IMG/VR virus record: IMGVR_UViG_3300042391_000634
Location: 124,001-188,000 of that record
Length of the DNA stretch: 64,000 nucleotides
Reading direction: 5' to 3' (one strand)
The translations under genes were made by a program, and so were the position numbers. Below the pieces are notes generated by a model that saw only the letters and a program-made list of their open reading frames with translations, had not been told where the DNA came from and did not search any database. Position 1 is the first letter of the stretch, and each line of letters starts with the position of its first letter. Positions 2,767 through 60,355 of the stretch are shown one piece after another.

Positions 2767-2798
2767 AACCCTCGAGAAATCGGGGGTTTTTTATTTTT
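2767..2798 (+). terminator. Intrinsic terminator after the capsid gene
   Basis: AACCCTCGA-GAAA-TCGGGGGTT stem (one G-U pair) followed by a T tract. Confidence 0.85.
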
Positions 2799-2829
2799 GG
2801 TATATTCTAAATAAAATTACATATATTTG
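2796..2829 (+). promoter_or_regulatory. Bacteroidota-type housekeeping promoter (TTTG ... TAnnTTTG)
   Basis: TTTG at 2796-2799 and TATATTTG at 2822-2829, 22 nt apart (slightly longer than the usual 19-21), 5 nt before the ATG at 2835. Confidence 0.45.
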
Positions 2830-2834: not shown

Positions 2835-3140
2835 ATGTCGGAAATTAACTACGAAATATTAAGATTAGATGTTTTATCTAAACTCATCGATGAAAGGAAT
2901 ATTTCTTGTAAAAACAAGAAAGAAGAGATGATTAAGTATCTAAAAATGGATGATGAAGACAAATACATTAGAGAGACAACATACGAAAAGTATGGAGGTC
3001 AATTCTTAGTGGGTATAGACCTTAAAAACAAACCTCATTTATCTCAGATGAATAAGTTAGTGGAAAAGAAACAGGCCTTCTATAAAGGTCTGTATGCGTC
3101 TGATAGGATATATTTCGTATCAAATCAAAAATTAATTTAA
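2835..3140 (+). CDS. Small hypothetical protein with an N-terminal SAP/HeH-like helix-extension-helix
   Basis: YEILRLDVLSKLIDERNISCKNKKEEMIKYL fits the Y-x-x-L-x-x-x-x-L-x-x-L-x-x-x-R-x-I ... K-x-E-x-I-x-x-L pattern of SAP/Rho-N-like motifs. Confidence 0.5.
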   Translation: MSEINYEILRLDVLSKLIDERNISCKNKKEEMIKYLKMDDEDKYIRETTYEKYGGQFLVGIDLKNKPHLSQMNKLVEKKQAFYKGLYASDRIYFVSNQKLI

Positions 3141-3536
3141 CTACCAGCTACGACAAGCCCAATATCTTGGTTTCCAACGAGGACCTGGATTATCACAATT
3201 CATACGTGCTCTAAAGTTCTTTCTTCTTTCAGGGTTATTTTTCTTAATAACCATTCTTTTACCTTTGGCGGATTTACCACCAAAACCGAAATTAACTTTA
3301 ACGACTTTACCTTTATCGTTTTTAACGTATACCTTAAATTTCTTTACGTCCCCTTGCATGATTTTACCCAATTGAACTTTACGTCCTTGATATTCCGCCT
3401 CGTTTAATAAACCACCATTATATTCAAAATTGGTGTTTTCAACAGAACCATCCTCATCTTCGTAAATTAATACGGGAGTTTGTTCGTTATATTCAAAAAG
3501 TCTTTCAAATTGGTCTTCTGTTATTGTTATTATCAT
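3141..3536 (-). CDS. Conserved T4-like phage small basic protein, probable head-associated
   Basis: LNEAEYQGRKV...KKFKVYVKN...KVNFG...PERRKNFRARMNCD...RYWACRSW resembles a conserved hypothetical family of T4-like aquatic phages; LNE-A is a candidate prohead protease site. Confidence 0.6.
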   Translation of the reverse strand: MIITITEDQFERLFEYNEQTPVLIYEDEDGSVENTNFEYNGGLLNEAEYQGRKVQLGKIMQGDVKKFKVYVKNDKGKVVKVNFGFGGKSAKGKRMVIKKNNPERRKNFRARMNCDNPGPRWKPRYWACRSW

Positions 3537-3964
3537 TATTTTTTCTTTTTAGGAACACAATTAGGAACTTCTTTACCGTTCTTCTTTTTCTTACCTACCA
3601 TTTCATATCCTTTCCAACAAGGGTCTTTTTCACCACTTTCCATTTTACCATCTTCATTCATACTAAACTGACCCATATCAGCGGTAACATCTTGTTTATC
3701 TTTACTTTTAGTTTCATTCATAAAGAAATCAAAAACTTGATCCATATTATTCTTAGCCTCAGATACATGATCGTCAGCCCAATCGTGACCATTTTTAATA
3801 ATGTTGTCCAATTCTTGTGGATCCATTTTCATCAACATCTCACATTGTCTATGTATTTGTTGTAAATTACTGAAAAACATGTAGTTTTCAGTTGATTGGT
3901 TTTCCTTTATAATCTTAGCAATATATTTTCTAAGATCGTTTTCTTTTAGTTTAATTACTTTCAT
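3536..3964 (-). CDS. Hypothetical, probable head-associated protein with a C-terminal CWKGY...VPNCVP motif
   Basis: N-terminal IKLKENDLRKYIAKIIKE helix; C-terminal DPCWKGYEMVGKKKKNGKEVPNCVP; TATTTAT box 6 nt upstream. Confidence 0.55.
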   Translation of the reverse strand: MKVIKLKENDLRKYIAKIIKENQSTENYMFFSNLQQIHRQCEMLMKMDPQELDNIIKNGHDWADDHVSEAKNNMDQVFDFFMNETKSKDKQDVTADMGQFSMNEDGKMESGEKDPCWKGYEMVGKKKKNGKEVPNCVPKKKK

Positions 3965-3979
3965 AATATATAAATAGTT

Positions 3980-5368
3980 TTATTTTTCAGATAATATCTC
4001 AAACTTAATTGAGTCATTATAGTAAATTTCTTCGGTATGTGTCTTAGCTTTAATTTCTAAATAATACTCTCTTGGAATGTAATTAGATGTATTAAAATAG
4101 AATGAATTTTCATTTGTTTTATCTAATAAAGTCCAATCATGTACAACCACATCAGTTGTTCCTTCTTTAATATATAATCTATAATAAACCTCATCAAATA
4201 ATACTGATTTAGGAACATCTAAAGATTTAAAGGTAACAATCACCTTTCTAATATCACCACGTTTAATTTTTTCACCTTGTTTAATACCAAAATATTGTAT
4301 TTTATAACGTTGTAATTCTGTTTGGTTTTCACCAATTGTATATTGTGTTGTAAATGGTTTAGGAACAAATTTTTGTCTTATATCTGAAAGTTCAGCACCA
4401 TCAATTGATAGATTGGTCCAATTATCATAAAAGAATTTTTTACCGTCACATAATATTCCATCAATACCAAAAGTCACTTTATATACACCCTTTTTAACTT
4501 GGGATACTAATATAACATCTTCTAATCCAATTATTGGATTACCATTAGAATCTAAAATATCCACTCTCGGCATATTATCTAAATCATAGAAGTTTGTTCC
4601 TTTAGTAACATATAGATATAAGTTATTAAAAACTCCAGCCGCAAAATTTTGACGATTATCATCTATCCTATCATCAATAAAGGTTTCAACATATGGTTCA
4701 AAGAAAGTTTGTGTATATTTTGTAAAAAATGAAACAGATTGTTCGGTCATAGGTGTTAAATCTTGAAATGGAACTGAAAACGCTAAACCAAATCCTTCAC
4801 AATCACCTAATGTATCATTGTATAACATATAATTAATTTCAGTGGTAATATCAACATCTATATGTTCGTTACCATTATCAAAATGAATAGTTTTTAAAAT
4901 TATTGGATTTTCTGCATATACTCCTGAGGTTGCCCAACTATCTAATGTAGTTCTATCATACCATGTCGATGGTCTTTGGTCAAATGTTTTGTTTCCAGTT
5001 AACGTATCTGCATTAGTGTTAACATAGTCAAATCCAACCCCTTCATCCCAATATTCATCCAATCCAAATAAAATTAAATCAAACGAAGTTGCTCTGTCTC
5101 TACCTGTTGATCTTAGTTGACCTTTAAACCCTTCATCACCAAAAATACAATTAGTTAAACGTAGTCTATGTGTAATTTTATTAAGATTTGCAAGTAACAG
5201 TTCGCCAGTATCAAATTTGTTAATTAAATCACTAAAATCTACTTTAAAAATAAATTTAGAAAATCCACCACCATAATATATCTCAGTTGTTGGGTTTTTA
5301 GCCGTATTAACCTGAGAATTCTTTATAATTGTATTATTCTTCTCAAAATAGGAACGTAAATATGACAT
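3980..5368 (-). CDS. Probable virion structural protein (beta-rich, Ig-like C-terminal domains)
   Basis: 462-aa ORF, beta-strand-rich composition, TATTTAT box upstream, structural neighbourhood; no specific family recognised. Confidence 0.5.
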   Translation of the reverse strand: MSYLRSYFEKNNTIIKNSQVNTAKNPTTEIYYGGGFSKFIFKVDFSDLINKFDTGELLLANLNKITHRLRLTNCIFGDEGFKGQLRSTGRDRATSFDLILFGLDEYWDEGVGFDYVNTNADTLTGNKTFDQRPSTWYDRTTLDSWATSGVYAENPIILKTIHFDNGNEHIDVDITTEINYMLYNDTLGDCEGFGLAFSVPFQDLTPMTEQSVSFFTKYTQTFFEPYVETFIDDRIDDNRQNFAAGVFNNLYLYVTKGTNFYDLDNMPRVDILDSNGNPIIGLEDVILVSQVKKGVYKVTFGIDGILCDGKKFFYDNWTNLSIDGAELSDIRQKFVPKPFTTQYTIGENQTELQRYKIQYFGIKQGEKIKRGDIRKVIVTFKSLDVPKSVLFDEVYYRLYIKEGTTDVVVHDWTLLDKTNENSFYFNTSNYIPREYYLEIKAKTHTEEIYYNDSIKFEILSEK

Positions 5369-5391
5369 CTTTTTTATTAATAAATATCAAA

Positions 5392-7118: not shown

Positions 7119-9077
7119 TTAATTTTTCATTAATGCATATGATGGTGTTCCAACAGGTCCATTAACACTTTTAAATGGTGTAATGGCTAAGTTATCGGCA
7201 AAACCTTGTACTTGTGCTGACGTTGATAAGACATGATAATTAGGTTCCCCATTTATATCTCCAGTTGGTATTCCCATATTTTGCATTTTTTCAGTTATAT
7301 CCATTGTTGTTTTAACCGCACTAAATCCAGGTAATTTACCGGCTAATAATAATAAAGGATTTGGTATATCTAAACCACCTGAAGCACTAAGTGCTCCACT
7401 AATTGCCGCACCAATTGCGGCGATAATCGCTTCACAACTGTCTAATCCTGTTTCAAGTACTTGTTTTAATAGAGCAATTAATGCTGCTATAACTAAATAA
7501 TATCTTTTTAATTTATCTTTTAATATTTTTCTAATTATTTTCATTAAGAAATTCTTAAGGTCGGCTTTAACTCTTTTCCAAAACTCCCTAATAAATTTCC
7601 AAAATAATTCTTTTATTGTACAAGTGAAGATTTTTTTAAGTTTTTTCATTAAATCTTTAGCATCAACAATTGCATTTTTAGCTCCGGCAACAAATTGTTT
7701 ATATATTATTACAAATGGTAAAAACATTTTTGGTGAAAGAATACTCATTATTAATGCTTTAGGAATATTAAAAATAAAAGATAAGTTAATTGAAATTTGA
7801 AAACTAGGTAAGTCAATTGAAAAATCTGACTGTTCATATGCATCCGATGCTGCCTTATTTAATGCACTATCTATTAATTTTCTTCTATCTTGTTTATCTT
7901 CTAAATAAACAAAATCCTCCATGTGAACTGTATTATATGGAACTTCATAGTTATTACAGTCAGCAAATTTTAACACCTTTCTTCGTCTTGCGTCTTCATC
8001 ATCTAAATCAATACCCTCAACATCATCAAAATCAAAATAAAATTCATCATTTTCTTCGTCATCATTAAATAAATTGGTTGGTGTTGAACCGGTTAATCTA
8101 CCACTATTACAGAATGCAAAAATTTTATTTAACATTCTCTCAAGATTTTGAATTGCCTCATCTAAAGACGGAGCAAAATCTAAAGGATTTTCCATACCAC
8201 TAAACGAACCACCAACACTAACACCATTTTTATCAGCAGACGCATTACATGCTTTTAATGTCATTAACATTGCCTTTTTAACAATCTCATTCAAATCTGG
8301 CATTTCTATATTTGAATAATAATCATTAAAAAAATCACCGACATTTACAAAACCATATTGACCCACCCCATTACCTTGAGTTAAACCTGTGATTTTAAAC
8401 CATTGGTGTTCTGATTGCCATGTAGAAGTAAATAAAGTTTTATTACTCGGTGTGTCATATTGATATTGGATTCCGATTGGTGTTGTTGTTCCTGAATTTA
8501 TAAATGTTTGGTATAAACCATAATTTATTTGAGCTTTATTACCATTTCTTTTTTTAGGGTCTTCATACATTATTTTACCATAGTCACTTTCAGGTGGAAC
8601 TTTAAACATACCTAAAAAATCAATTTCTCTTGGGTAAATGTTAACTTCGTCCATTTCTTGTGTTCCACCCATAACTTGATTTGTACCACAAATACCATCA
8701 TTTGCAAAAAATGCGTTTTTAACACAATCCATAAGGATTTGTTTAGCTGAATTTTTTGTAACATCAACTGAATCCAATACGTGTTGTCTAAGTCTTTGAG
8801 TTGATTGAAATCTATCGGGATCGTTAACAGTTCTACCCGCATCTAAAAATTTATTAACAACTGAAACAACTTCTTCAAATATGTTTTTTTTGTTTTTAGT
8901 TTTCGGTTTTTTGTTTCCTAATTTAGATTTAAGTTGTTCTAATTTGGTATTTAAATTTGGAAGGTTTGGTTGAAACTTTTTTAAAGCATCTTCAGGACTT
9001 ATGTTAAGATTAGCATATTTGTCTTGGTCAACACTTTTTTGTATAATATCAATAGTATTTTTTAGTGATTCAAACAT
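7119..9077 (-). CDS. Large hypothetical protein, probably structural
   Basis: 652-aa ORF coupled to the 125-aa gene under a TATTTAT box and upstream of the spike gene; no family recognised. Confidence 0.55.
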   Translation of the reverse strand: MFESLKNTIDIIQKSVDQDKYANLNISPEDALKKFQPNLPNLNTKLEQLKSKLGNKKPKTKNKKNIFEEVVSVVNKFLDAGRTVNDPDRFQSTQRLRQHVLDSVDVTKNSAKQILMDCVKNAFFANDGICGTNQVMGGTQEMDEVNIYPREIDFLGMFKVPPESDYGKIMYEDPKKRNGNKAQINYGLYQTFINSGTTTPIGIQYQYDTPSNKTLFTSTWQSEHQWFKITGLTQGNGVGQYGFVNVGDFFNDYYSNIEMPDLNEIVKKAMLMTLKACNASADKNGVSVGGSFSGMENPLDFAPSLDEAIQNLERMLNKIFAFCNSGRLTGSTPTNLFNDDEENDEFYFDFDDVEGIDLDDEDARRRKVLKFADCNNYEVPYNTVHMEDFVYLEDKQDRRKLIDSALNKAASDAYEQSDFSIDLPSFQISINLSFIFNIPKALIMSILSPKMFLPFVIIYKQFVAGAKNAIVDAKDLMKKLKKIFTCTIKELFWKFIREFWKRVKADLKNFLMKIIRKILKDKLKRYYLVIAALIALLKQVLETGLDSCEAIIAAIGAAISGALSASGGLDIPNPLLLLAGKLPGFSAVKTTMDITEKMQNMGIPTGDINGEPNYHVLSTSAQVQGFADNLAITPFKSVNGPVGTPSYALMKN

Positions 9078-9454
9078 TATAATGAATAGTTACTTGTTTT
9101 ATTATCGTTTCCATCATTAACCAATCTATCTAAAATCTCACGATCTTCATCAGATAAAGTCAATTTACCCATAGAACCTCCACCACCTGAACCACCGGTG
9201 GTTTGTTTAAGTAAAACACTTTGTAATTTAACTAGTGAAATTTTCTTTTCAGTACAATCGTTTAATATCTTCTGTTGTTCTTTAATAACAGGTCCAATTG
9301 TACTCATGTCTTCGGCGTCCTTCATAAAACTCATCATTTTTCTCAAAATGGTGGATGCAGTATTTCTGTTCTCAACAACATCGTTGTAGATTTCCTGCAT
9401 TAAGGCTAACGCTGAATCAACATCTAATGTAATATTGTTTCTTTGTGTTCTCAT
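9077..9454 (-). CDS. Hypothetical helical protein
   Basis: 125-aa ORF, TATTTAT box at 9459-9465 (minus), stop overlaps the next start. Confidence 0.6.
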   Translation of the reverse strand: MRTQRNNITLDVDSALALMQEIYNDVVENRNTASTILRKMMSFMKDAEDMSTIGPVIKEQQKILNDCTEKKISLVKLQSVLLKQTTGGSGGGGSMGKLTLSDEDREILDRLVNDGNDNKTSNYSL

Positions 9455-9468
9455 ATCAATAAATAGAT

Positions 9469-10170
9469 TTATTCTAAAAATCCACCCAAAATACCGTCAT
9501 ATAGTTTCTTATAACGTTTAAGAGAGACTCTAATCTCTTTTGTTGATAAGGAGGTCATTTCTCGTAAAGAGAGTAAGATAAGGTTCTTATTGAATTTGTT
9601 ACCATCACCTACTTGAAATATCTTATCAAAATTACTGAAGATTTCAAGTAATGCGTAACCTAACTTTCTCTCGTTATCAGATAGATTTTTTTCTTTTTCA
9701 ATAAAATTTTCTAAATCAATTGTAAGTTTAGTGATAACAGAACTATAATCAATTACGAATTCATCCGTAACATATGAATGGTCTTTACTATCCTCAAAGT
9801 CGGAAGATATATCATCATAAGAAACCTGTCTATTCTGTTCTTTGGTATCTTTCTGTATTGCTCCCATAAGGTAGTTTTTACAGATGGTTCCAAAATATGA
9901 ATACGCTTTAGTATTCTTTGTGTGGTCAAATTTGTTAATCTTAGTTATAAGAAAAGACATTGTATCGGTATGAATTTCTTCAAATTCCATATCTTTTCTA
10001 TAAAGTTTATAACGTCGAATAATTGATTCAACCATTATAATTAGGGGTTCACGTAAATATTCATTGAATATCTTATTTCTTTCTGTTTCGTCACTACTTT
10101 CTAAGTAATTGACTACCGCCTTCTCTTGATCCTCCCCAAAATATATTTTTTGGGTTCTTGGTCTTGGCAT
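9469..10170 (-). CDS. gp55: Phage sigma factor, gp55-like (late transcription)
   Basis: Sigma region-2 pattern LIIMVESIIRRY...EEIHTDTMSFLITKINKFDHTKNTKAYSYFGTICKNYL, comparable to the gp55 F-D-x-x-K...A-Y-F-T-x-I motif; no clear region-4 HTH. Confidence 0.7.
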   Translation of the reverse strand: MPRPRTQKIYFGEDQEKAVVNYLESSDETERNKIFNEYLREPLIIMVESIIRRYKLYRKDMEFEEIHTDTMSFLITKINKFDHTKNTKAYSYFGTICKNYLMGAIQKDTKEQNRQVSYDDISSDFEDSKDHSYVTDEFVIDYSSVITKLTIDLENFIEKEKNLSDNERKLGYALLEIFSNFDKIFQVGDGNKFNKNLILLSLREMTSLSTKEIRVSLKRYKKLYDGILGGFLE

Positions 10171-12904: not shown

Positions 12905-13639
12905 CTAATCATATCTTTGTAAAATATCACCAATAATTGGATTACGAACAATGTCTTGCATTCCAAACTCAAAAATTCCAATTCCTTTAACATCTTGTAA
13001 TCTCATTTTAGCATCGAATAAACCAGATTTAGTTTTATCTCTAAATTTATCTGATTGTTCAAGATCTCCTGAAATAAAGAATTTTGAATTAAATCCAATA
13101 CGAGTTAATAATAACTTAATCTGTGATGGGGTGGCATTTTGAGCTTCTTCAAAAACAAGAATAGTATTATCTACGTTCCAACCTCTCATATAAGCAAGAG
13201 CAGCAACTTCAATGTAACCTTGGTCTTTTAATTCTTCGCGAGCCTCTTTACCAATAATTTTATTTAATAGATAATATGATGGATAAATGTATGGGTCTAA
13301 TTTCTCTTCTAAACCCCCTGGAAGTGACCCTAATTTCTCCTCAGCTTCAACTGCGGGTCTTACTATGATAATCTTCTCATACTTGTTAGAATCGTCGTAT
13401 AATAGGTCTACCGCACGTTTCATTGCTATGTAGGACTTACCTACACCTGCTGGACCGAAACATAATGTAATTTGATTTTCTCCAAGAATGTTCCAATATA
13501 TTTCTTGGTTTTTTGTAAGGAACTTTTCTTTAGGACGTTTAATGATTTGTCTAATCCTATCTTTATGTGATATCTTCTTCTCTTCTACTAATACAGGTGG
13601 TGGTTGGTGAGATGTTTTGATTCTTGTTTTATAAGCCAA
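12905..13639 (-). CDS. phoH: PhoH-family ATPase
   Basis: Walker A FGPAGVGKS, IIIVRPAVE, LGSLPG, AYMRGW, EEAQN, GDLEQSD; TTG start. Confidence 0.95.
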   Translation of the reverse strand: MAYKTRIKTSHQPPPVLVEEKKISHKDRIRQIIKRPKEKFLTKNQEIYWNILGENQITLCFGPAGVGKSYIAMKRAVDLLYDDSNKYEKIIIVRPAVEAEEKLGSLPGGLEEKLDPYIYPSYYLLNKIIGKEAREELKDQGYIEVAALAYMRGWNVDNTILVFEEAQNATPSQIKLLLTRIGFNSKFFISGDLEQSDKFRDKTKSGLFDAKMRLQDVKGIGIFEFGMQDIVRNPIIGDILQRYD

Positions 13640-13682
13640 AGTGAATAGTTTTAATTGTTCCGTTTATTGTTTATAAATATCA

Positions 13683-16014: not shown

Positions 16015-16066
16015 TAATCATTAATTATATTGTTATAATATAACTAAAAAAAATGAAAAAACAAAA

Positions 16067-16636
16067 TTACTTTGCTTTATTTACTCCTGTGATTTTACCT
16101 TTGAATATCGAATCTCCTACCTTTAATACTAAATTTTCATTGATTGAAGATGTTGTGGATGCAGTAAGGATTTGATTTAATTTTTCATCCATTACTTTAC
16201 GAACTGTATTCTCAATAAGAACGGCCATTGCATTCATATCAATATTGTTATTAACAATAGTTTGTTTTGGTTGTGCCGATGGTCTTGTTGCCACACCTTC
16301 TTGTTCCATTAAACGTTTTGCACCTTTAACAAAATCCATATCTAAAGTATCATTTAAAGAAATTTGTTGAATTGGATTTTCCATCATTGCTTTTTTAATT
16401 GCGTCAGGTAACTTTGAATTTTGAATTTTATCAACACTCATATTAGCACCTACAGGTCTTGTATTAGGTTGTTGTGGGGTCTGCATTTCCATTAATTCTG
16501 ATGGGTCGGATCTTAACATTTCACTATTAACATGACCTCTTTCATAATTTCCACCATCCACTTTGTTCATAATTTTTTTAGCTTGAACTAATTTTTTCAT
16601 TAAATCGTTAGACGATATTGTTCCTTGTTGTGCCAT
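16067..16636 (-). CDS. Hypothetical protein (late, possibly virion)
   Basis: 189-aa ORF with a TATTTAT box at 16641-16647 (minus). Confidence 0.55.
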   Translation of the reverse strand: MAQQGTISSNDLMKKLVQAKKIMNKVDGGNYERGHVNSEMLRSDPSELMEMQTPQQPNTRPVGANMSVDKIQNSKLPDAIKKAMMENPIQQISLNDTLDMDFVKGAKRLMEQEGVATRPSAQPKQTIVNNNIDMNAMAVLIENTVRKVMDEKLNQILTASTTSSINENLVLKVGDSIFKGKITGVNKAK

Positions 16637-16669
16637 GTTAATAAATATTTTATATAATAATAAACCTTT

Positions 16670-18097: not shown

Positions 18098-18589
18098 TTA
18101 TAACATTAATTTTTTTATTCTTTCAAGTTGTTCAAATAACCCCGTTAATTTTATTGATGATATTGAATTTTTTTCTGAATTAGAATTAAATTTAAATGAA
18201 GGTAACCAACTTGATTTTTTTGTATGTTTCTTTAAGAAACTATTTTTTCTTTCTCCTGTGGTGCTTGAAATATCATCAGATTGTTTTCTACCTTCTTTTC
18301 TATTTTGTATTAAATCTCTTTCTCCTTGGAGATGTTGTTTAGACCAATTGTCCATTAAATCACCACCAGCCAAGTCATACCTAATTTTATCAGCAACTTT
18401 ATCCATACTTTGTATGTCATGAATAATACGTTTAAGTTGACCATATGTTACTTTTTTATCGGTTAAGAGTTTTTTAGCTCTCATTACCCCATGCATATTT
18501 TGACCGTTAAGACCTGTAACCGTGTGGTTGATCTTATCTAAAATGTTCTGTGGTAAATCAAAGTCCCTATTTTTTAACTCTTTATTCAT
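18098..18589 (-). CDS. Hypothetical basic protein, probable head-associated
   Basis: 163-aa ORF ending LFEQLERIKKLML, in a late-box operon. Confidence 0.55.
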   Translation of the reverse strand: MNKELKNRDFDLPQNILDKINHTVTGLNGQNMHGVMRAKKLLTDKKVTYGQLKRIIHDIQSMDKVADKIRYDLAGGDLMDNWSKQHLQGERDLIQNRKEGRKQSDDISSTTGERKNSFLKKHTKKSSWLPSFKFNSNSEKNSISSIKLTGLFEQLERIKKLML

Positions 18590-19337
18590 TATCGTCTTTA
18601 AGTCCTTTTAAAATATGGTCGGGTTTAAGACCATAAGTTTTCATACTATTTTTAAGTGATTTTATTTGTTTTGCAACTATTGGATTGATTTCAATTTCTT
18701 CAACCTCTTCTTCTTTAGATAATACATCGTTGTCTTTTCCTTTTTGTTTTAAAAGATTGTCAATGTATTCCTCCATGAATTTTTTAGGATTTTCAACCAA
18801 TCTTACTTTGTCTTCAGGTAAACTTGGGTCAAAACCTAATTGTTTTGCTCTTTCATCTCGTTCAACAGGATCTTCAATACCTAAATTTTCAAATTCACCT
18901 TCAGCATCCTCATAATCAACATTGTCAGAATGTAATAATTTATCAGCACCCAATACTTTACTCATATCAGATTCACCCCAATATCTTCTAAAACCCATAC
19001 CTAATTTTGGTGATATTGATGATTGTCCCGCACCTGTTAATGCCACTTCATCACTTGTTGAATTTGATGATATACCTTTAGTATTAAAATCTCCTGGTTT
19101 TTTACTCTTTGCAAAATTACCGGCAGCATCTACAATTTCATCAACCTCTTCTTCTTTTTCTACTTTATTAGGGATTTTATCATAATCTGTATCATCGGAG
19201 AATTCTTTAGCCCATTTTGACCATTTCTTCTTTTCTTTCTTGGGTTTACCCTTTTCATTCGCCTTAGCGTAGAAAAATCTTTGTTGTGCTTTTGAAGCAA
19301 ATTTCTCTTCAATTACCTGTTTTATAAAATTATTCAT
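18582..19337 (-). CDS. Hypothetical protein, probable head-associated
   Basis: N-terminal VIEE-KFASKAQQRFFYA; SKAQQR-type motifs recur in T4-like phage small proteins; first gene after the TATTTAT box at 19354-19360 (minus). Confidence 0.55.
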   Translation of the reverse strand: MNNFIKQVIEEKFASKAQQRFFYAKANEKGKPKKEKKKWSKWAKEFSDDTDYDKIPNKVEKEEEVDEIVDAAGNFAKSKKPGDFNTKGISSNSTSDEVALTGAGQSSISPKLGMGFRRYWGESDMSKVLGADKLLHSDNVDYEDAEGEFENLGIEDPVERDERAKQLGFDPSLPEDKVRLVENPKKFMEEYIDNLLKQKGKDNDVLSKEEEVEEIEINPIVAKQIKSLKNSMKTYGLKPDHILKGLKDDNE

Positions 19338-19353: not shown

Positions 19354-19384
19354 ATAAATATCAAATGTTATGAAAGATATTTAT
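19354..19384. promoter_or_regulatory. Back-to-back TATTTAT late-promoter boxes (representative of 20 such sites)
   Basis: ATAAATA at 19354-19360 drives the leftward operon; TATTTAT at 19378-19384 drives the rightward structural genes. Confidence 0.7.
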
Positions 19385-20944: not shown

Positions 20945-21002
20945 AGGAAAATTCATATAAAAAAAATAAAAAAGACAAAAATAAAAGTATTTATATAACA
21001 TA

Positions 21003-21872
21003 ATGGCAACAACAAGACCCTTCGCATACAACACAGGATCCACCATAGATGGAACAACACAAATTGGAAACATCGCAATAGGTGTTTCAGATCAAGATTA
21101 TTCACAAAATCCAGGTGGGGTTAAATGGTGGATGGGACCTGACGAAGATTTGGGTTATGTTATTGCATACGAGGTACCAACAGGAGATCAACCAACACAA
21201 GTTGAGGTGGATGCGTACCTTAATTTTTGGAGATCAACAAGTTTAACGGATCAATCTTTAGTTGATTTATTAAACTCAATACCACCTACAAATGGTTTAC
21301 CATTATTTACAAATAAAACAGACGCATTAGATTGGTTAAATACTAATGGATATTTTACATCATATTCAAGTTTTGGTAGTTCAGGATTTCAATGGATGAC
21401 TATTAACTCAATTACCGATACAACCGCATCAGGTGTAGGTCAAAACGGCATCACAGTTACAATTACACAAGACAATGGAGGTATGGAAACGGAGAATGGT
21501 ATGTACAGCCCAACGACATTTCCAGAACAATACGGGGTTCCACTAAATGGTAATCAAATCCGAAACACTAAAGATGGTGTATTTACGGCAACATTTAGTC
21601 AACCTGTTTTAAATCCACTAATTGCATTTGCTAGTGTAGGTAATCCAAATTTATCAGTTCCAGTTCAATCAACTTTACCGTTTACTCCAATTTGGGAGCA
21701 GTCAACAACTTATCAAAACGCATCAGGTCCAACTCAATACACTCAATTCACAGGACAAGAAGGATTCAATATTATTCGAATAGATGGTACTGTAAGTAGC
21801 GTATCTTTTTTATATACAGTTGAGGAATATTATTGCACAGTTTGTTTTGGATTTGTAGATCAGAACTCGTAA
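21003..21872 (+). CDS. Probable virion surface/fibre protein, two-module
   Basis: N-module RPFAYNTG...KWWMGPDEDLGYVIA; beta-rich C-module (FSQPVLNPLIAFASVG...GQEGFNIIRIDG); TATTTAT box upstream. Confidence 0.55.
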   Translation: MATTRPFAYNTGSTIDGTTQIGNIAIGVSDQDYSQNPGGVKWWMGPDEDLGYVIAYEVPTGDQPTQVEVDAYLNFWRSTSLTDQSLVDLLNSIPPTNGLPLFTNKTDALDWLNTNGYFTSYSSFGSSGFQWMTINSITDTTASGVGQNGITVTITQDNGGMETENGMYSPTTFPEQYGVPLNGNQIRNTKDGVFTATFSQPVLNPLIAFASVGNPNLSVPVQSTLPFTPIWEQSTTYQNASGPTQYTQFTGQEGFNIIRIDGTVSSVSFLYTVEEYYCTVCFGFVDQNS

Positions 21873-21890
21873 TAGTTGTATTTATAACAT

Positions 21891-22262
21891 ATGGAATTTC
21901 ACATAAGACAAGGGGCAACTGACCCAATATTAAAAATGAGAATGATTGACGACGGTAAAAACGATAAGTCATCATTTAATGAAATGTTAGCCACAGGTTC
22001 AACAATTACATTTGAAATGTCCGATGTAACAACTGGGGAGCCTATGGTTGTAGGTGGGGAATGTTTATTAACCAATAGGGTAAAGAAATATGATTATACA
22101 ACAGATGAGAATTATATTACATATAGATTCACAGAAGAACAAACATCACAAGTAGGAAGATTTGAGGGTAAGATTACGGTTCAATTTAAAGACACTAATC
22201 AAAACCCAACAACCAAACTTATTCTACCAATTAAAGAAAAACTTTACATTAATATTTTTTAA
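21891..22262 (+). CDS. BppU-N-like Ig-fold structural protein
   Basis: FHIRQGATDPILKM...YRFTEEQTSQVGRFEGKITV matches the BppU N-terminal pattern (I-K/R-Q-G-D/A-T-x-P ... Y-x-F/W ... T ... G-x-F/Y); TATTTAT box upstream. Confidence 0.55.
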   Translation: MEFHIRQGATDPILKMRMIDDGKNDKSSFNEMLATGSTITFEMSDVTTGEPMVVGGECLLTNRVKKYDYTTDENYITYRFTEEQTSQVGRFEGKITVQFKDTNQNPTTKLILPIKEKLYINIF

Positions 22263-22784: not shown

Positions 22785-25682
22785 ATGAAAGAGGTTATCT
22801 CTCAGGAGGTTATTGAAGGCTTCCTCAATGGTGGAGACGATGAAATGTATATCGTCGGAGTTGAATACGACTACCCAACCAACACAATTTACAAGATTAT
22901 ACAAGACCCAATTGAGGGTAAAATTATTAAAACTGATACATTTACTCCGTTTTTATGGGTAGGTGATTTAACAGGTTTAAATTTCTATAACAACTCAAAA
23001 GCCATGCAAAAGAAACGTATGGGTGAGTTTGGTATATTAATTGAAAAGTTAGATACACATAATAACGAACGTTTAGAAAATGGTATGACCCATATCGTTA
23101 AGAGTATTAAATCTTATACGGATTTAGTTTCGTTTTTTAGAATGGGTGGATTGAATCCTTGGGACGAAAAAGTTAGACATAATTTTACAATCTTAAACCC
23201 TGTTGAACAATACCTTATACAAAAGAAAAAAAGATTATTTAAAGGTATTGATGAGTATAGTGGTGTGAATAGATTTGTGTTTGATATTGAAACCACAGGT
23301 CTTGACCCTGAAACTTGCGTTATTATATTAATTGGGGTTAAGGATAACCGTGGTATGAATGAAACTATATCAGCGTTCGGTGAAAATGGAGAAAAGAAAT
23401 GTATTGAAAGATTTTTCAAATATATAAAAGATTTAAAACCAACCATTGTTGCAGGATATAACTCTGCCTTCTTTGACTGGCCCTTTATTTTAAAACGTGC
23501 TGAAATACTTGGTGTCGATGTTGATGGTTTAACACAAATCTTTACATCTCAAGGAATGAAAGAGAAAGAAGGTATGTTAAAACTTGCCAATGAGGTTGAA
23601 CCATATAAACAACACGTTATATGGGGATTTAATATTATTGATATTGCACATTCTGTAAGACGCGCTCAAGCGATTAATTCTGAAATTAAATCTTGGGGAT
23701 TAAAATATATTACAACATATTTGGAAAAAGAAAAACCTAATCGGGTTTATGTTGAAGGTTCTAAAATTTCAAAAATATATTTGGATAATGAAAGTTATTA
23801 TGTAAATCCAAAGACAGGTGGATATAAACAAATTGGAGAACCTGGAACAGAAAATTTAACACAAAAATATCCAGGTAAGTATGAGATATGGACAGGTAGA
23901 AAAATTGTAGAACAATATCTAGATGATGACTTGTATGAAACAATGGTTGTAGATGATTCATTCTCTCAATCAACATTTTTACTATCAAAACTCGTTCCTA
24001 CAACGTATGAAAGAATTGCCACAATGGGAACCGCAACACTATGGAAAATAATAATGTTAGCTTGGTCTTATGAAAATAATTTAGCAATACCAGCAAAAGA
24101 TGAGAAACGTGCTTTCACGGGAGGTTTATCTCGTTTATTAAATGTTGGGTTTGCAAAGAACATTGTTAAGTTTGACTATGCGTCACTTTACCCATCTATT
24201 CAATTAGTTTATGATGTGTTTCCCGCTTGTGATGTAATGGGTGTTCAAAAATCAATGTTAAAATATTTCCGTGATATTCGTATTAAATATAAACATCTTG
24301 CGGGTTCGTTAGCAAAAACAAATCCCGTTGAAGCTGAGATGTATGATAGAAAACAATTACCAATTAAGATTTTTATCAACGCATATTTTGGTAGTTTATC
24401 CGCTCCACACGTATTCCCTTGGGGAGAAATGGATTCAGGTGAAACCATTACCTGTATTGGTCGTCAGTGTTTAAGAATGATGATTATGTTCTATATGAAG
24501 AAAGGATATAAACCACTTGTAATGGATACGGATGGTGTGAACTTTGAAACACCTGAAGGAATTGAAAATACAAAGTATATCGGTAAAGGATTAAATGAAT
24601 TGGTTATAGAAGGAAAAGAATATTCAGGTATTGAAGCAGATACCGCAGAGTTTAATGATATATTCATGAGAAATGAAATGGGGTTAGATATTGATTATGT
24701 TGCACCGGCTTGTATTAATGTTTCTCGTAAGAACTATATTATTAAGATGATGAAGAAAGGTAAAGAGAAAATTAAATTAACAGGTAATACAATTAAATCT
24801 AAAAAGTTACAAACATATGTGGTGGAATTTTTAGATGAAGGATTAAAGTATTTGTTAAATGGTGATGGACATTCTTTTGTGGAATTATATTATGATTATG
24901 TAAGTAAAATATTTGAGAAAGAAATACCATTGTCTAAAATGGCAAACAAAGCACGTGTTAAACAAAGTGTTAATGAATACAAAAAGTATGTAACGAAAAC
25001 TACTAAAGCTGGTTCATTAATGTCTCGTCAAGCACATATGGAATTAATTATGAATAATAATTATCCCGCAGGTTTAGGAGATACAATTTATTATATTAAT
25101 AACGGAGTAAAAAAATCATCAGGCGACGTTCAGAAAATAACTAAACCAACAAAGAAACAACAAGAAGAGTTTACGGCGAAGAACGGATATCCAATGCCCG
25201 ATAATTTTATTGAGGTTAATTGTTATATGATTGATGAAAAGGAAATAACAAATAATCCAGATTTAAAAGGTGATTATAATGTTCCTCGTTATTTAAACAT
25301 TTTTAATAAACGTGTAGAACCATTATTAGTTGTTTTCAATCCAGCAATTAGAGAAGATATATTAATTGAAGACCCAAAAGATAGACAATACTTTACAAAG
25401 GCACAATGTGATTTAGTTAATGGTTTTCCATTAAAAGAAGAAGGTCAAGATAAGTTAGATGAGGTTATGACTTTATCTGATAGTGAGGTTATATTTTGGA
25501 ATAAAGTTCAAAGAGACCCTTTCTTTATGTATGTAGAAAATAGTTTAGAACTTGCTGACCAATATTGGGTGGAACATAATAGAAAAGTTGTTACACTACA
25601 AGCTGAAAGTATTAAATCTAATGAAGAAGAAATAATCGAGAATAACAATCACGATTATGCGTTTCACGCAATAGAAATTTAG
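22785..25682 (+). CDS. gp43: Family B DNA polymerase (gp43-like) with a 3'-5' exonuclease domain
   Basis: ExoI FDIETTG, ExoII GYNSAFFDWPFI, ExoIII YLDDD; polymerase motifs FDYASLYPS, KIFINAYFG, MDTDG. Confidence 0.96.
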   Translation: MKEVISQEVIEGFLNGGDDEMYIVGVEYDYPTNTIYKIIQDPIEGKIIKTDTFTPFLWVGDLTGLNFYNNSKAMQKKRMGEFGILIEKLDTHNNERLENGMTHIVKSIKSYTDLVSFFRMGGLNPWDEKVRHNFTILNPVEQYLIQKKKRLFKGIDEYSGVNRFVFDIETTGLDPETCVIILIGVKDNRGMNETISAFGENGEKKCIERFFKYIKDLKPTIVAGYNSAFFDWPFILKRAEILGVDVDGLTQIFTSQGMKEKEGMLKLANEVEPYKQHVIWGFNIIDIAHSVRRAQAINSEIKSWGLKYITTYLEKEKPNRVYVEGSKISKIYLDNESYYVNPKTGGYKQIGEPGTENLTQKYPGKYEIWTGRKIVEQYLDDDLYETMVVDDSFSQSTFLLSKLVPTTYERIATMGTATLWKIIMLAWSYENNLAIPAKDEKRAFTGGLSRLLNVGFAKNIVKFDYASLYPSIQLVYDVFPACDVMGVQKSMLKYFRDIRIKYKHLAGSLAKTNPVEAEMYDRKQLPIKIFINAYFGSLSAPHVFPWGEMDSGETITCIGRQCLRMMIMFYMKKGYKPLVMDTDGVNFETPEGIENTKYIGKGLNELVIEGKEYSGIEADTAEFNDIFMRNEMGLDIDYVAPACINVSRKNYIIKMMKKGKEKIKLTGNTIKSKKLQTYVVEFLDEGLKYLLNGDGHSFVELYYDYVSKIFEKEIPLSKMANKARVKQSVNEYKKYVTKTTKAGSLMSRQAHMELIMNNNYPAGLGDTIYYINNGVKKSSGDVQKITKPTKKQQEEFTAKNGYPMPDNFIEVNCYMIDEKEITNNPDLKGDYNVPRYLNIFNKRVEPLLVVFNPAIREDILIEDPKDRQYFTKAQCDLVNGFPLKEEGQDKLDEVMTLSDSEVIFWNKVQRDPFFMYVENSLELADQYWVEHNRKVVTLQAESIKSNEEEIIENNNHDYAFHAIEI

Positions 25683-26794: not shown

Positions 26795-26832
26795 AATTTG
26801 ATTTATTATTATAAATATCTTATATTTAGGTT

Positions 26833-28768: not shown

Positions 28769-28822
28769 CTATTATATATAATATAACTAAATAGAACGGA
28801 ACATTAAACTATTTATTAAGAT

Positions 28823-30598: not shown

Positions 30599-30753
30599 TC
30601 ATCTCCATAAATGTCCTTTTTCTTAGGTTTTACCAAATCCTCAATGTGTTTTTCTAAGACTTTATAAATTTTAAGTCCATTATTATCACAATAATTTTTT
30701 AGTATTTCATGGTGTTTTACACTTATTTTAACGTTTTTTTGATTCTTTTCCAT
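30595..30753 (-). CDS. 52-aa ribbon-helix-helix-like DNA-binding protein (below the ORF-track length cutoff)
   Basis: Translated by hand: MEKNQKNVKISVKHHEILKNYCDNNGLKIYKVLEKHIEDLVKPKKKDIYGDD; beta strand KNVKIS, helix A, G-L turn, helix B; TATTTAT box at 30771-30777 (minus). Confidence 0.7.
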   Translation of the reverse strand: MEKNQKNVKISVKHHEILKNYCDNNGLKIYKVLEKHIEDLVKPKKKDIYGDD

Positions 30754-30756
30754 AAT

Positions 30757-30830
30757 AAAGATATTAAAAGATAAATAACTATCTTTTTTAAAAAAGTTGG
30801 GAAATCTTTGATAAAAACAAAGATATTTAT
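30757..30830. promoter_or_regulatory. Divergent late promoters (RHH gene and sheath) with four AAAGATA boxes
   Basis: AAAGATA at 30757, 30767 and 30819, inverted TATCTTT at 30780; TATTTAT boxes at 30771-30777 (minus) and 30824-30830 (plus). Confidence 0.55.
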
Positions 30831-30869
30831 TAGATAAGTAATAAAATTAATTTAACCAAACAAAAATCA

Positions 30870-33767: not shown

Positions 33768-33791
33768 TATAAAAGGAGATATAAAAAGAAG

Positions 33792-33820
33792 AAGGATATC
33801 AGAAATGGTATCCTTTTTTT
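33792..33820 (+). terminator. Intrinsic terminator after the sheath gene
   Basis: AAGGATATCA-GAAA-TGGTATCCTT followed by a T run. Confidence 0.85.
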
Positions 33821-33951: not shown

Positions 33952-34088
33952 CTGGGGCCTGTAAAAAACTACGAAAAATAATTGACATAAACAACCTTTT
34001 TCATATAATTAATCTAAAATAAAATTATTTTCCTTTTGGATATATTTATAAGAAAGTAAATAACTAAAAAAATTTAACAACACACAAT

Positions 34089-35563: not shown

Positions 35564-35574
35564 TATTTATAGGT

Positions 35575-37446: not shown

Positions 37447-37508
37447 ATAAAGATTATTAATACAATTAAAAAAACTATATATTATCTATTTATAGATAAA
37501 AGAATAAG

Positions 37509-48401: not shown

Positions 48402-48450
48402 TAAGAATATTAATAAAAGTTGGGATATTTATACATATAAAACAAATATT

Positions 48451-57638: not shown

Positions 57639-57663
57639 GTTGGATATTTATAAAAAAAAGAAA

Positions 57664-57965: not shown

Positions 57966-58014
57966 ATTAAAACTATATACATAACCATTTTGTGTTTGTT
58001 TATATTTATTGAAT

Positions 58015-60301: not shown

Positions 60302-60355
60302 AATGTTTTTTCGTTATAATAATAGAAAATCACATAGTTTCTATTTATTATAAGA

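What the first reader, a model, noticed from the sequence alone, without database searches (positions are those of the whole stretch)
9469..10170. TATTTAT box before 20 genes defines a probable late regulon for the gp55-like sigma factor
Seen: TATTTAT lies about 4-40 nt before starts on the plus strand at 19378, 20988, 21879, 28810, 30824, 34043, 35564, 37487, 48426, 57645, 58003 and 60342, and on the minus strand at 3970, 5380, 9459, 13673, 16641, 19354, 26811 and 30771. Almost all are virion genes; it is absent before pol, SSB, uvsX, SNF2 and the glycosyltransferases. Known: T4 gp55 reads the -10-only promoter TATAAATA. Inference: TATTTAT(A/T) is this clade's late promoter, oddly the reverse complement of the T4 box. 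It also corrects several ORF-track starts (19391, 48451, 57664, 58015).
Basis: partly seen in the sequence, partly recalled or inferred. Interest (0 to 1): 0.6.

Follow-up and report, generated by a model that had tools for sequence, protein, structure and literature searches.

The report
Late-gene promoter box of jumbo phage
A short DNA word, TATTTATA, sits just upstream of the virus-particle, packaging and lysis genes of this 336-kb freshwater phage and its many relatives; it is most likely their late-gene promoter, a two-base variant of the phage T4 one, and often lies so close to the start codon that the messages would have no leader.

Summary
All 20 TATTTAT sites exist at the stated coordinates. 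The window as a whole holds fewer copies than shuffles give (37 against 61). The signal is in position and strand. Genome-wide (335,630 bp), 82 copies lie sense-oriented within 60 nt upstream of ORF starts, against 18 antisense and 22.7±4.6 in dinucleotide shuffles of those same regions. In 342 distinct orthologous upstream regions from IMG/VR relatives, 332 keep the exact 7-mer, and neighbouring box-less genes almost never have it. Two cultured phages carrying a homologue of the window's sigma show the same box before terminase, portal and tail tube. They are Flavobacterium phage immuto and Microcystis phage Mel-JY01. No -35 element accompanies the box. Genes with their own box include terminase, portal, protease, sheath, tube, baseplate, fibres and endolysin. 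Polymerase, SSB, UvsX, helicase, NrdAB, SNF2 and both sigmas lack one (13/16 against 1/15).

The extended box TATTTATA differs from T4's TATAAATA only at positions 4 and 5. ORF 9469-10170 has an N-terminal domain whose best structural match is T4 gp55 (Z 10.7), plus a possibly sigma-4-like C-terminal domain. No gp45 or gp44 was detected.

About 40% of boxes lie 4-8 nt from an ATG, which predicts leaderless late mRNAs. No start-site data exist.

The parts
9469..10170 (-). Gene for a 233-aa sigma-like protein: gp55-like N-terminal domain (about residues 9-132) plus a helical C-terminal domain (about 137-233). It has no box of its own.
   Evidence: PHROG 234 'late sigma transcription factor' E 9e-5. 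Pfam Sigma70_r2 E 1.4e-3, below the curated cut-off. Best PDB sequence hit is T4 gp55, 7d7c_F, E 1.1e-3. hhalign of the family profile against T4 gp55 gives E 6e-5, probability 65%, 116 columns. AF2 model pLDDT 90. Best of 48,161 chains is 7d7d_F gp55, Z 10.7; the C-terminal domain matches sigma region 4 chains at Z 4.9-5.8. No TATTTAT in 0/48 orthologous upstream regions.
3970..3976 (-). Box, 5 nt before the ATG of ORF 3536-3964 (leaderless-type spacing)
   Evidence: kept in 15/19 distinct orthologous upstream regions, gap 4-5
5380..5386 (-). Box, 11 nt before the ATG of ORF 3980-5368
   Evidence: kept in 49/49 orthologous regions
9459..9465 (-). Box, 4 nt before the ATG of ORF 9077-9454, immediately downstream of the sigma gene
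   Evidence: 49/49 orthologous regions, gap 4 in 41
13673..13679 (-). Box, 33 nt before the TTG start of PhoH (12905-13639). It heads a same-strand array that runs through GT2 and the sigma gene.
   Evidence: 32/33 orthologous regions; PhoH of phage immuto also has the box
16641..16647 (-). Box, 4 nt before the ATG of ORF 16067-16636
   Evidence: 6/12 orthologous regions, so the least conserved site
19354..19360 (-). Box, 16 nt before the ATG of ORF 18582-19337; back-to-back with the box at 19378
   Evidence: 28/28 orthologous regions
19378..19384 (+). Box, 6 nt before the ATG at 19391. This supports 19391 rather than 19370 as the start.
   Evidence: 21/21 orthologous regions, gap 5-6, all ATG
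20988..20994 (+). Box, 8 nt before the ATG of ORF 21003-21872
21879..21885 (+). Box, 5 nt before the ATG of ORF 21891-22262
26811..26817 (-). Box, 16 nt before the ATG of the head-tail adaptor-like ORF 25679-26794
   Evidence: 18/18 orthologous regions
28810..28816 (+). Box, 6 nt before the ATG of ORF 28823-29335
   Evidence: 26/26 orthologous regions
30771..30777 (-). Box, 17 nt before the ATG of a 52-aa ORF (30595-30753); divergent partner of the box at 30824
30824..30830 (+). Box, 39 nt before the ATG of the tail sheath gene (30870-33767)
   Evidence: 31/31 orthologous regions; the immuto sheath gene also has the box
34043..34049 (+). Box, 39 nt before the ATG of the tail tube gene (34089-34577)
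   Evidence: ATATTTAT invariant in all 47 distinct upstream sequences while the flanks diverge; 42/42; the immuto and Mel-JY01 tube genes also have it
35564..35570 (+). Box, 4 nt before the ATG of ORF 35575-37446
37487..37493 (+). Box, 15 nt before the ATG of the 1578-aa ORF 37509-42245
   Evidence: 28/29 orthologous regions
48426..48432 (+). Box, 18 nt before the ATG at 48451. It favours 48451 over the TTG at 48394. The unit includes a DksA/TraR-like gene at 49320-49691.
57645..57651 (+). Box, 12 nt before the ATG at 57664, the first box after the box-less replication and Nrd block. It favours 57664 over the GTG at 57628.
58003..58009 (+). Box, 5 nt before the ATG at 58015 of the gp25-like baseplate wedge gene. 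The ORF-track TTG at 58009 overlaps the box.
60342..60348 (+). Box, 7 nt before the ATG of the 1130-aa ORF 60356-63748

Best explanation
TATTTAT, with extended consensus (A/G)(A/G)TATTTATA, is the single, -10-type element of the late promoters of this 336-kb T4-superfamily jumbo phage and of a wide clade of relatives. The host is probably a Bacteroidota, Flavobacterium-like bacterium.

Inferred mechanism: host core RNA polymerase carrying the phage sigma encoded at 9469-10170 melts the box and starts a few bases downstream. The sigma's N-terminal domain is gp55-like. The box keeps the A at position 2 and the A at position 6, the bases T4 gp55 inserts into its two deep pockets. It differs from TATAAATA only at positions 4 and 5. 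No upstream (-35) element is used.

The promoters head the units for packaging, head, tail, baseplate, fibre and lysis genes. They are missing before replication and nucleotide-metabolism genes.

In about 40% of cases the box ends 4-8 nt (mode 5) before an ATG. If the 8-mer sits at -12..-5, as the Flavobacterium sigma-A box does, the A of the ATG is +1. A large share of late mRNAs would then be leaderless, in a genome that in any case avoids Shine-Dalgarno sequences.

Shown here: the enrichment, strand bias, conservation, functional split, absence of a -35 element, recurrence in immuto and Mel-JY01, and the gp55-like fold. Inferred: that the box is a promoter, that this sigma reads it, the late timing, and the leaderless starts.
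For: Enrichment against AT-matched controls: 82 against 22.7±4.6, and 82 sense against 18 antisense.

Purifying selection: 332 of 342 distinct orthologous upstream regions of 12 genes keep all seven bases while the flanks vary. Per-gene presence or absence, and the spacing class, are conserved.

Avoidance inside genes on both strands, 0.48x expectation, which fits a DNA-level signal.

No information above 0.27 bit at any position from -60 to -1 relative to the box.

Function: 13/16 recognisable late-function genes have their own box, against 1/15 others (Fisher p 3.9e-5).

Recurrence in distant relatives. The same box stands before terminase, portal, sheath, tube and baseplate genes in Flavobacterium phage immuto (sigma homologue 28% identical). 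It stands before terminase and tube in Microcystis phage Mel-JY01, where a GGAG ribosome site lies between the box and the ATG. Both lack the SigA-like sigma.

Intrinsic terminators abut the box, which is then followed by 4-6 nt and the ATG, for example at the terminase gene.

Sigma.

Published points of reference. T4 places TATAAATA at -13..-6 (PMC1524935). gp55 has pockets for A-12, A-9 and A-8 (PMC7892883). The Flavobacterium sigma-A box lies at -12..-5, and only 5.5% of host mRNAs are leaderless (PMC9723704).

Short-gap class: 35/36 use ATG.
Against: No transcription start site, timing or binding data exist. The one metatranscriptome found is held only as contigs of relatives and gives no 5' ends.

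The sequence evidence for gp55 homology is weak: E 1e-3 to 6e-5, hhalign probability 65%. The family profile hits SigA region 2 in the PDB slightly better than gp55.

No gp45 clamp or gp44 loader was detected and gp33 was not searched for, so the T4 activation mechanism is not reproduced.

With strict T4 geometry (-13..-6), the modal spacing would put +1 on the T of the ATG.

PhoH, and by position dUTPase, the glycosyltransferases and the sigma gene itself, lie in box-headed arrays.

Most box-driven genes in the left 120 kb have no recognisable function, so 'late' is extrapolated for them.
Confidence: 0.68

Rival explanations
1. The box is a promoter element, but it is read by another factor. 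Candidates are the phage's second, SigA/RpoS-like sigma (G000 214427-215236, regions 2 and 4), or host sigma-A assisted by a phage activator.
For: A complete sigma with regions 2 and 4 is encoded in the genome. The gp55-like assignment of ORF 9469-10170 is weak at the sequence level. The box shares TA at positions 1-2 and T at positions 5 and 7 with the host-type TAnnTTTG box.
Against: Immuto and Mel-JY01 carry the box but no Sigma70_r2-detectable or SigA-like sigma. Both do carry the gp55-like homologue. No -35 element accompanies the box, which a region-4-bearing primary-like sigma would normally use. In TATTTAT no A and T are spaced like the A-11 and T-7 of canonical -10 recognition, whereas the A2/A6 spacing matches the gp55 pockets (PMC7892883). 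The box lacks the terminal TTTG of the Bacteroidota box, and separate TTTG-N-TAnnTTTG promoters exist in the genome.
Confidence: 0.12
2. The box acts at the RNA level. It would be an AU-rich translation enhancer, such as an S1-binding site, or a processing or stability site in the 5' region of mRNAs in a host without Shine-Dalgarno pairing.
For: The box lies close to start codons: 36/83 within 8 nt. The genome avoids SD motifs, 20/435 genes. AU-rich leaders are known translation enhancers (general knowledge).
Against: Spacing ranges from 4 to 44 nt but is fixed per gene. In Mel-JY01 a GGAG site sits between the box and the ATG. The word is depleted equally on the antisense strand of genes. It directly follows intrinsic terminators, where a new promoter is needed. 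All seven bases are kept in 97% of orthologous regions, far beyond what mere AU-richness would need. It matches the T4 late promoter at 6 of 8 positions.
Confidence: 0.07
3. The box is the operator of a phage DNA-binding regulator (a late activator or an early repressor) rather than a sigma-recognised element.
For: A strictly conserved 7-8 bp word in front of a co-regulated gene set fits this reading equally well. A DksA/TraR-like regulator and many proteins of unknown function are encoded.
Against: No second promoter-like element accompanies the box, and in terminator-abutting cases there is no room for one. The word is asymmetric and strictly oriented (82 against 18). It resembles a known sigma-read -10-only promoter.
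Confidence: 0.08
4. Chance consequence of AT-rich intergenic DNA.
For: The genome is 31% GC, and the total count in the window is below the shuffle expectation.
Against: z is about 13 against dinucleotide shuffles of the upstream regions themselves; there is strand bias; conservation is 97% across relatives.
Confidence: 0.01

Closest known systems
Phage T4 late promoters (TATAAATA at -13..-6) read by gp55 with gp33 and the gp45 sliding clamp
   Same: A single 8-bp A/T box with no -35 element. It lies upstream of head, tail, packaging and lysis genes and is absent before replication genes. Six of eight positions are identical in the same orientation, including both adenines that gp55 places in its deep pockets (-12 and -8). 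The phage encodes a small sigma whose N-terminal domain is structurally closest to gp55 (Z 10.7).
   Different: Positions 4 and 5 are TT, not AA. The residues aligned with gp55 N13 and H95, the shallow pocket for A-9, are Glu and Tyr here (alignment confidence is modest). The sigma carries an extra C-terminal domain of about 90 aa. No gp45 or gp44 was detectable. The box is often only 4-8 nt from the ATG, whereas T4 late mRNAs have leaders with SD sites.
Variant late boxes of other T4-like phages (Aeh1 CTAAATA; cyanophage and KVP40 NATAAATA)
   Same: They show that the late box drifts within the T4 superfamily while keeping the -10-only architecture (PMC1524935).
   Different: Those variants change the first positions and keep the AAATA core. 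Here the central AA is replaced by TT.
Bacteroidota sigma-A promoters (-33 TTTG, -7 box TAnnTTTG at -12..-5)
   Same: An 8-nt box beginning with TA. If placed at -12..-5, the modal spacing puts +1 on the A of the ATG. The genome also contains about 13 genuine promoters of this host type.
   Different: No TTTG at the 3' end and no -33 element. The gene set served is different.
Leaderless genes of Actinobacteria, Deinococcus and archaea (-10 element a fixed few nt upstream of the ATG)
   Same: A -10-like box at a sharply peaked distance from an ATG start codon (35/36 ATG), and no SD.
   Different: Here the arrangement is confined to one phage promoter class. Flavobacteria, the likely kind of host, have only about 5.5% leaderless mRNAs (PMC9723704). 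None of this has been verified experimentally.

Membership tests
T4-type late promoter / gp55 system | A single A/T-rich 8-bp box with no conserved -35 element | tested here: met
   Information content is at most 0.27 bit at every position from -60 to -1 relative to the box in 83 sites.
T4-type late promoter / gp55 system | Consensus TATAAATA | tested here: not met
   The consensus is TATTTATA, 6/8 identical. In immuto, TATAAATA is not enriched upstream: 3 of 30 copies, against 14 of 30 for TATTTATA.
T4-type late promoter / gp55 system | Box centred about 10 bp upstream of the mapped transcription start | not testable with these tools
   No 5'-end data. The only RNA run is held as contigs of relatives.
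T4-type late promoter / gp55 system | Precedes late (virion, packaging, lysis) genes and not replication genes | tested here: met
   13/16 late-function genes against 1/15 others have their own box, p 3.9e-5. PhoH is the exception.
T4-type late promoter / gp55 system | Phage encodes a gp55 homologue | tested here: met
   PHROG 234 E 9e-5. PDB 7d7c_F gp55 E 1.1e-3. hhalign E 6e-5, probability 65%. Fold match Z 10.7, top of 48,161 chains. The sequence-level support is weak; the structural support is better.
T4-type late promoter / gp55 system | gp45 sliding clamp and gp44/62 loader that activate late transcription | tested here: inconclusive
   No match to Pfam PF09116 or PF02916, to the T4 gp45 or gp44 proteins, or to PF00712. 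There is only a 15.6-bit AAA+ hit for PF13177. Divergent clamps could escape these searches.
T4-type late promoter / gp55 system | gp33 co-activator that binds the beta-flap | not tested
   I made no search with a gp33 sequence or model. The sigma's extra C-terminal domain could take over that role (inference).
Sigma-70 family | Region 2 (-10 recognition and core binding) | tested here: met
   Pfam Sigma70_r2 in 18/47 family members, best E 3e-5. Profile against SigA region 2, E 2.4e-3. Sigma-2 domains match at Z 8-10.
Sigma-70 family | Region 4 helix-turn-helix | tested here: inconclusive
   The C-terminal domain (137-233) matches sigma-H, sigma-E and SigA region 4 chains at Z 4.9-5.8, among unrelated helical hits. 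No Pfam r4 hit. No hhalign match to region 4 of the phage's own SigA-like sigma.
Bacteroidota sigma-A promoter | TAnnTTTG -7 box with a TTTG -33 element | tested here: not met
   The box ends in TATA, not TTTG, and has no upstream TTTG. True examples of that type occur elsewhere in the genome.
Leaderless mRNA genes | Transcript starts at the A of the AUG | not testable with these tools
   Geometry only: 36/83 boxes end 2-8 nt (34 of them 4-7 nt, mode 5) before the start, and 35/36 of those starts are ATG. Spacing is conserved in orthologues. A terminator abuts the box at four such genes.

The most novel reading that the evidence does not exclude
In a very abundant clade of freshwater jumbo phages, and in smaller relatives on Flavobacterium and Microcystis, late transcription would use a gp55-derived sigma that has kept or gained a sigma-4-like domain. 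It would work without the gp33/gp45 sliding-clamp coupling of T4 and would read TATTTATA. In the jumbo phages a large fraction of late proteins, including terminase and portal, would be made from leaderless mRNAs, in a host phylum where leaderless messages are rare.
Probability: 0.3. Interest if true: 0.7.

Novelty: new variant of a known kind. Interest (0 to 1): 0.55.

Why it matters
The box gives a simple, testable rule for the late regulon and the transcription units of a hugely abundant but almost unannotated phage clade. More than 7,900 variants of the sigma exist at 90% clustering, and 1,308 representatives at 50%. The box also fixes gene starts.

It shows how the T4 late system can shift its specificity by two central bases. 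It also points to a form of the system that may be uncoupled from the replication clamp.

The predicted leaderless late mRNAs bear on how translation starts in Bacteroidota, which do not use Shine-Dalgarno pairing. [quoted passage not shown]

Tried and rejected
1. Nucleotide search of the sigma region against 50,697 phage records: no match.
2. Full-text search for TATTTATA with 'promoter' and 'phage': three unrelated papers. 'Mel-JY01': none. The 2026 paper on Flavobacterium jumbophages does not mention promoters.
3. RNA evidence. One lake metatranscriptome (X1) holds 7% of the sampled words. Laid on 30600-36500 it gives only short contigs of relatives, mostly under 95% alike. They cover the sheath and tube genes, with no depth at 30600-30796, and give no usable 5' ends. 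I treat this as no evidence on starts.
4. Searches for gp45, gp44, a beta clamp and a clamp loader: negative or sub-threshold. These are not proof of absence.
5. Terminator association across all boxes is modest: 11/83 against 17/355. Only the clear individual cases carry weight.
6. hhalign of the sigma family against the phage's SigA-like sigma aligns only 43 columns of region 2, probability 9%. The C-terminal domain's sigma-4 likeness therefore rests on the fold alone.
7. The idea that the box is the T4 box read on the other strand is rejected. Most boxes lie in long one-directional gene arrays, and strand bias is 82 against 18.
8. No structure-based complex prediction was run. No claim here rests on protein-protein binding.
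Full report
**Setting**

The window is bases 124,001-188,000 of a single 335,630-bp contig with 31% GC. It encodes T4-superfamily proteins:
- a Gp23-type capsid protein, family-B DNA polymerase, gp32-like SSB, a RecA/UvsX-like protein and SNF2;
- tail sheath and tail tube;
- a baseplate wedge protein;
- a DnaB-like helicase and NrdA/NrdB.

So it is a jumbo myovirus. Shine-Dalgarno cores are under-represented upstream of starts: 20 of 435 genes, fewer than in a control window. Positions -11 to -14 are A-rich. About 13 promoters of the Bacteroidota type, TTTG-N17-23-TAnnTTTG, occur near gene starts. The nearest cultured relative of the sigma gene is a Flavobacterium phage. A Bacteroidota, Flavobacterium-like host is therefore likely. 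This is an inference.

**The observation**

All 20 listed TATTTAT sites are present, in the sense orientation, 4-39 nt upstream of a start codon. The total count in the window (37) is lower than shuffles give (61.3±7.0), so the signal lies in placement and not in number.

Genome-wide:
- The word occurs 234 times on both strands. Density is 5.3 per kb in the 4.7% of the genome that is intergenic and 0.47 per kb in coding DNA.
- It is the commonest 7-mer in the 60 nt upstream of ORF starts (80 genes).
- 82 sense copies stand against 18 antisense, and against 22.7±4.6 (maximum 36 in 500) in dinucleotide-preserving shuffles of those same upstream regions.
- Inside genes the word is depleted to 0.48x a codon-shuffle expectation on both the sense and antisense strands (z -6.4 and -5.5). 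Most composition-matched words sit at 0.75-1.1.
- It is present in 54/143 tandem and 13/33 divergent intergenic regions, but in only 1/18 convergent ones.

**Anatomy of the box**

The aligned sites give (A/G)(A/G)TATTTATA. T is avoided at -1 (8%) and A stands at position 8 in 70%. No position from -60 to -1 carries more than 0.27 bit, so there is no -35-like partner.

The distance from the end of the 7-mer to the start codon has three classes:
- a sharp class at 4-8 nt: gap 4 seven times, 5 seventeen times, 6 five times, 7 four times, 8 twice;
- a broad class at 11-23 nt;
- a few sites at 25-48 nt, with sheath and tube both at 39.

In the short class 35 of 36 starts are ATG.

**Conservation**

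IMG/VR holds hundreds of relatives; loci L001-L160 were fetched.

- Upstream of the tail tube gene, ATATTTAT is invariant in all 47 distinct sequences while the flanks diverge.
- For 12 box-bearing genes, 332 of 342 distinct orthologous upstream regions keep the exact 7-mer, and the flanking positions vary freely.
- Presence is gene-specific. It is 49/49, 49/49, 32/33, 28/28, 21/21, 26/26, 31/31, 42/42 and 28/29 for box-bearing genes. It is 0/46, 0/48, 0/35 and 0/29 for the box-less neighbours g6915, the sigma gene, GT2 and g29339.
- Each gene keeps its spacing class.
- tblastn alignments begin at residue 1-3 of the short-gap proteins. The ATG next to the box is therefore the real start. This supports the proposed start at 19391, where 21/21 orthologues have an ATG 5-6 nt after the box.
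- The starts at 48451, 57664 and 58015 are favoured by position only. The alternative TTG at 58009 overlaps the box itself.

**Recurrence in distant relatives**

In Flavobacterium phage vB_FspM_immuto the homologue of the window's sigma is 28% identical. In 100 kb of this phage, the box precedes 20 ORFs. They include terminase large subunit, portal (gp20), sheath, tube, PhoH, and proteins annotated as tail spike and virion structural protein. TATTTATA is sense-upstream in 14 of its 30 copies; TATAAATA in only 3 of 30.

In Microcystis phage Mel-JY01 the sigma match is partial (31% identity over 45% of the query). There, TATTTAT is again the top upstream 7-mer in the 42-kb structural region. It stands before terminase, the next (portal-sized) gene and tail tube, and a GGAG ribosome site lies between the box and the ATG. 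The box therefore does not depend on the mode of translation initiation. This argues for a DNA-level promoter rather than a ribosome signal.

**Which genes carry the box**

Genes with a recognisable function that have their own box:
- terminase large subunit (gap 6), portal (gap 5) and head maturation protease;
- the ORF upstream of the capsid gene;
- a head-tail adaptor-like protein, sheath, tube and a gp25-like wedge protein;
- four tail-fibre-like proteins;
- an endolysin and a second protein with an endolysin-type domain.

The capsid gene, a gp6-like wedge gene and a hub-like gene lie just downstream of box-headed genes.

Genes without a box: DNA polymerase, SNF2, gp32, UvsX, an exonuclease, DnaB-like helicase, NrdA, NrdB, dUTPase, both glycosyltransferases, a DksA-like protein and both sigma genes.

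PhoH is the one clear non-structural gene with a box, here and in immuto. The split is 13/16 against 1/15 (Fisher p 3.9e-5).

One caveat. On the minus strand of the window, dUTPase, GT1, GT2 and the sigma gene lie downstream of boxes in the same orientation. Read-through could add them to the late programme. Most box-driven genes in the left 120 kb are of unknown function.

**Relation to the T4 late promoter**

T4 late promoters are TATAAATA at -13 to -6 with no -35 element (PMC1524935, PMC2988020). That is true, but it follows from near-palindromy. Read in the same direction, the two 8-mers differ only at positions 4 and 5 (AA against TT).

In the cryo-EM structure of the T4 late complex, gp55 flips out A-12, A-9 and A-8. 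A-12 and A-8 go into deep pockets; A-9 goes into a shallow one formed by N13 and H95 (PMC7892883). The box here keeps the two deep-pocket adenines, at box positions 2 and 6, and changes the base at the shallow-pocket position.

In the alignments, gp55 residues map as follows:
- R57, F86 and Y97 are conserved.
- L54 becomes Ile.
- H95 aligns with Tyr-90 here (Phe in immuto) and N13 aligns with Glu-13.
- T99 aligns with Gly-94.

This correlation is suggestive only, because the alignments are of modest confidence.

**The sigma**

For ORF 9469-10170 (233 aa) the evidence is:
- PHROG 234 'late sigma transcription factor', E 9e-5;
- Pfam Sigma70_r2 below threshold, E 1.4e-3, found in 18 of 47 family members;
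- T4 gp55 as best PDB sequence hit, E 1.1e-3;
- hhalign of the family profile against T4 gp55: E 6e-5, probability 65%, over residues 5-120;
- against this, a family-profile hmmsearch of the PDB that ranks SigA region 2 (E 2.4e-3) slightly above gp55 (E 0.064).

An AlphaFold2 model built from 47 diverse homologues has pLDDT 90 and two helical domains. Against 48,161 chains, the best match is gp55 in the gp45-dependent activation complex: 7d7d_F, Z 10.7, 116 residues, rmsd 5.3. It is followed by sigma-2 domains at Z 8-10. The C-terminal domain (137-233), which T4 gp55 lacks, matches region-4 chains of sigma-H, sigma-E and SigA at Z 4.9-5.8, among unrelated helical proteins. It gives no sequence signal for region 4. 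I therefore call the C-terminal domain possibly sigma-4-like and unresolved.

I found no gp45, gp44, beta clamp or convincing clamp loader. I did not search for gp33. If the C-terminal domain binds the beta-flap, the system could do without gp33 and the clamp. This is an inference.

**The second sigma**

The genome also encodes a 269-aa SigA/RpoS-like sigma with regions 2 and 4, at G000 214427-215236. It is an obvious rival reader of the box. However, immuto and Mel-JY01 have the box and the gp55-like homologue but no such sigma. In addition, the box has no -35 partner and no A/T pair spaced like A-11 and T-7. A recent paper reports that the two largest cultured Flavobacterium jumbophages carry two sigma variants each. 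It does not discuss promoters (PMC13573597).

**The leaderless prediction**

The Flavobacterium sigma-A box TAnnTTTG occupies -12 to -5, and only 5.5% of host mRNAs are leaderless (PMC9723704). If TATTTATA sits at -12..-5, four further bases precede +1. That is exactly the modal arrangement: 7-mer, 5 nt, ATG. With the T4 register (-13..-6), +1 would fall one base later. The observed range of 4-8 nt is within the usual flexibility of start-site choice.

Four short-gap genes, including the terminase gene, have a canonical GC hairpin plus T-run ending 1-16 nt before the box. That leaves no room for any other promoter or for a leader. Three of the host-type promoters likewise end 4-5 nt before an ATG. 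I consider leaderless late mRNAs likely for this class (about 0.5), but there is no start-site evidence.

**RNA data**

One lake-water metatranscriptome holds contigs of relatives over the sheath and tube genes. It is kept as contigs only and says nothing about 5' ends.

**Verdict**

The finding is real. Its interpretation as the late promoter of this clade is the best-supported reading. It is a new variant of the T4 late system rather than a new kind of system. The parts that would be most interesting if confirmed are the altered box and its match to the sigma's pockets, the extra domain of the sigma with no detectable clamp coupling, and the leaderless geometry.

Noticed in passing
G000:C1:214427-215236 (+), outside the window (locus L162:1339-2148): A second phage sigma factor: 269 aa, Pfam Sigma70_r2 and r4, similar to SigA/RpoS (PDB hits down to E 2e-40). 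It has no TATTTAT box upstream, and it is absent from phages immuto and Mel-JY01.
   Followed up: partly
window 2796-2829 (+), before ORF 2835-3140; about 12 further sites in the genome (e.g. G000 7548-, 7587+, 50962+, 325154+, 328403+): Promoters of the Bacteroidota host type (TTTG-N17-23-TAnnTTTG), often beginning TTTGGAATAT. They are probably early promoters read by host sigma-A. Three of them end only 4-5 nt before an ATG.
   Followed up: partly
window 16015-16066 (-, before GT1), 28769-28822 (-, before SNF2), 49941-50040 (+, before gp32); also G000 70455-70560, 296498-296534, and upstream of 288588: A possible third promoter class before replication-type genes: a T-rich stretch with TTTTCA, followed by TTATATTAT(A). 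It has not been tested statistically.
   Followed up: no
G000:C1:86275-86679 (-) and 90452-91590 (-), outside the window: ARAGORN finds a phage-encoded tmRNA (tag ATSTVAVA*) and four tRNAs (Glu, Ser, Met, Thr). A TATTTAT box directly follows the tmRNA gene, 4 nt before the next ORF's ATG.
   Followed up: partly
G000:C1 about 22-40 kb, outside the window: Dense short repeats are confined to this region: CGTATTACA (15 copies, one strand) and TTGTTTGGCA (more than 25 copies). DnaA-box-like GTGGATAACTTTAT occurs at 16689, 23014 and 40262. Their meaning is unknown.
   Followed up: no
window 49320-49691 (+): A DksA/TraR-like 'starvation-inducible transcriptional regulator' (PHROG 858, E 8e-21) lies in the unit headed by the box at 48426. 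Phage immuto also encodes a DksA-like protein.
   Followed up: no
window 12905-13639 (-) and immuto NC_055915 130599-131285: PhoH is driven by the box in both phages (gaps 33 and 24). It is the only clearly non-structural gene with its own box.
   Followed up: partly
G000:C1 15.5-50 kb (e.g. 18951, 21498, 45693, 46929), outside the window: A set of ORFs beginning MKLLDI..., two of which match PHROG 20046. Each is preceded by a box at leaderless-type spacing. They look like a paralogous family of unknown function under the same control.
   Followed up: no
window 33898-33904 (+): An extra intergenic TATTTAT lies between the sheath stop and the tube box, 184 nt before the tube ATG and not next to any ORF of 60 aa or more. 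It could be a second promoter or a chance copy.
   Followed up: no
window 34578-34680 (+): The hub-like gene 34681-35430 is preceded by a hairpin plus T-run and has no box, unlike its neighbours. How it is transcribed is unclear.
   Followed up: no
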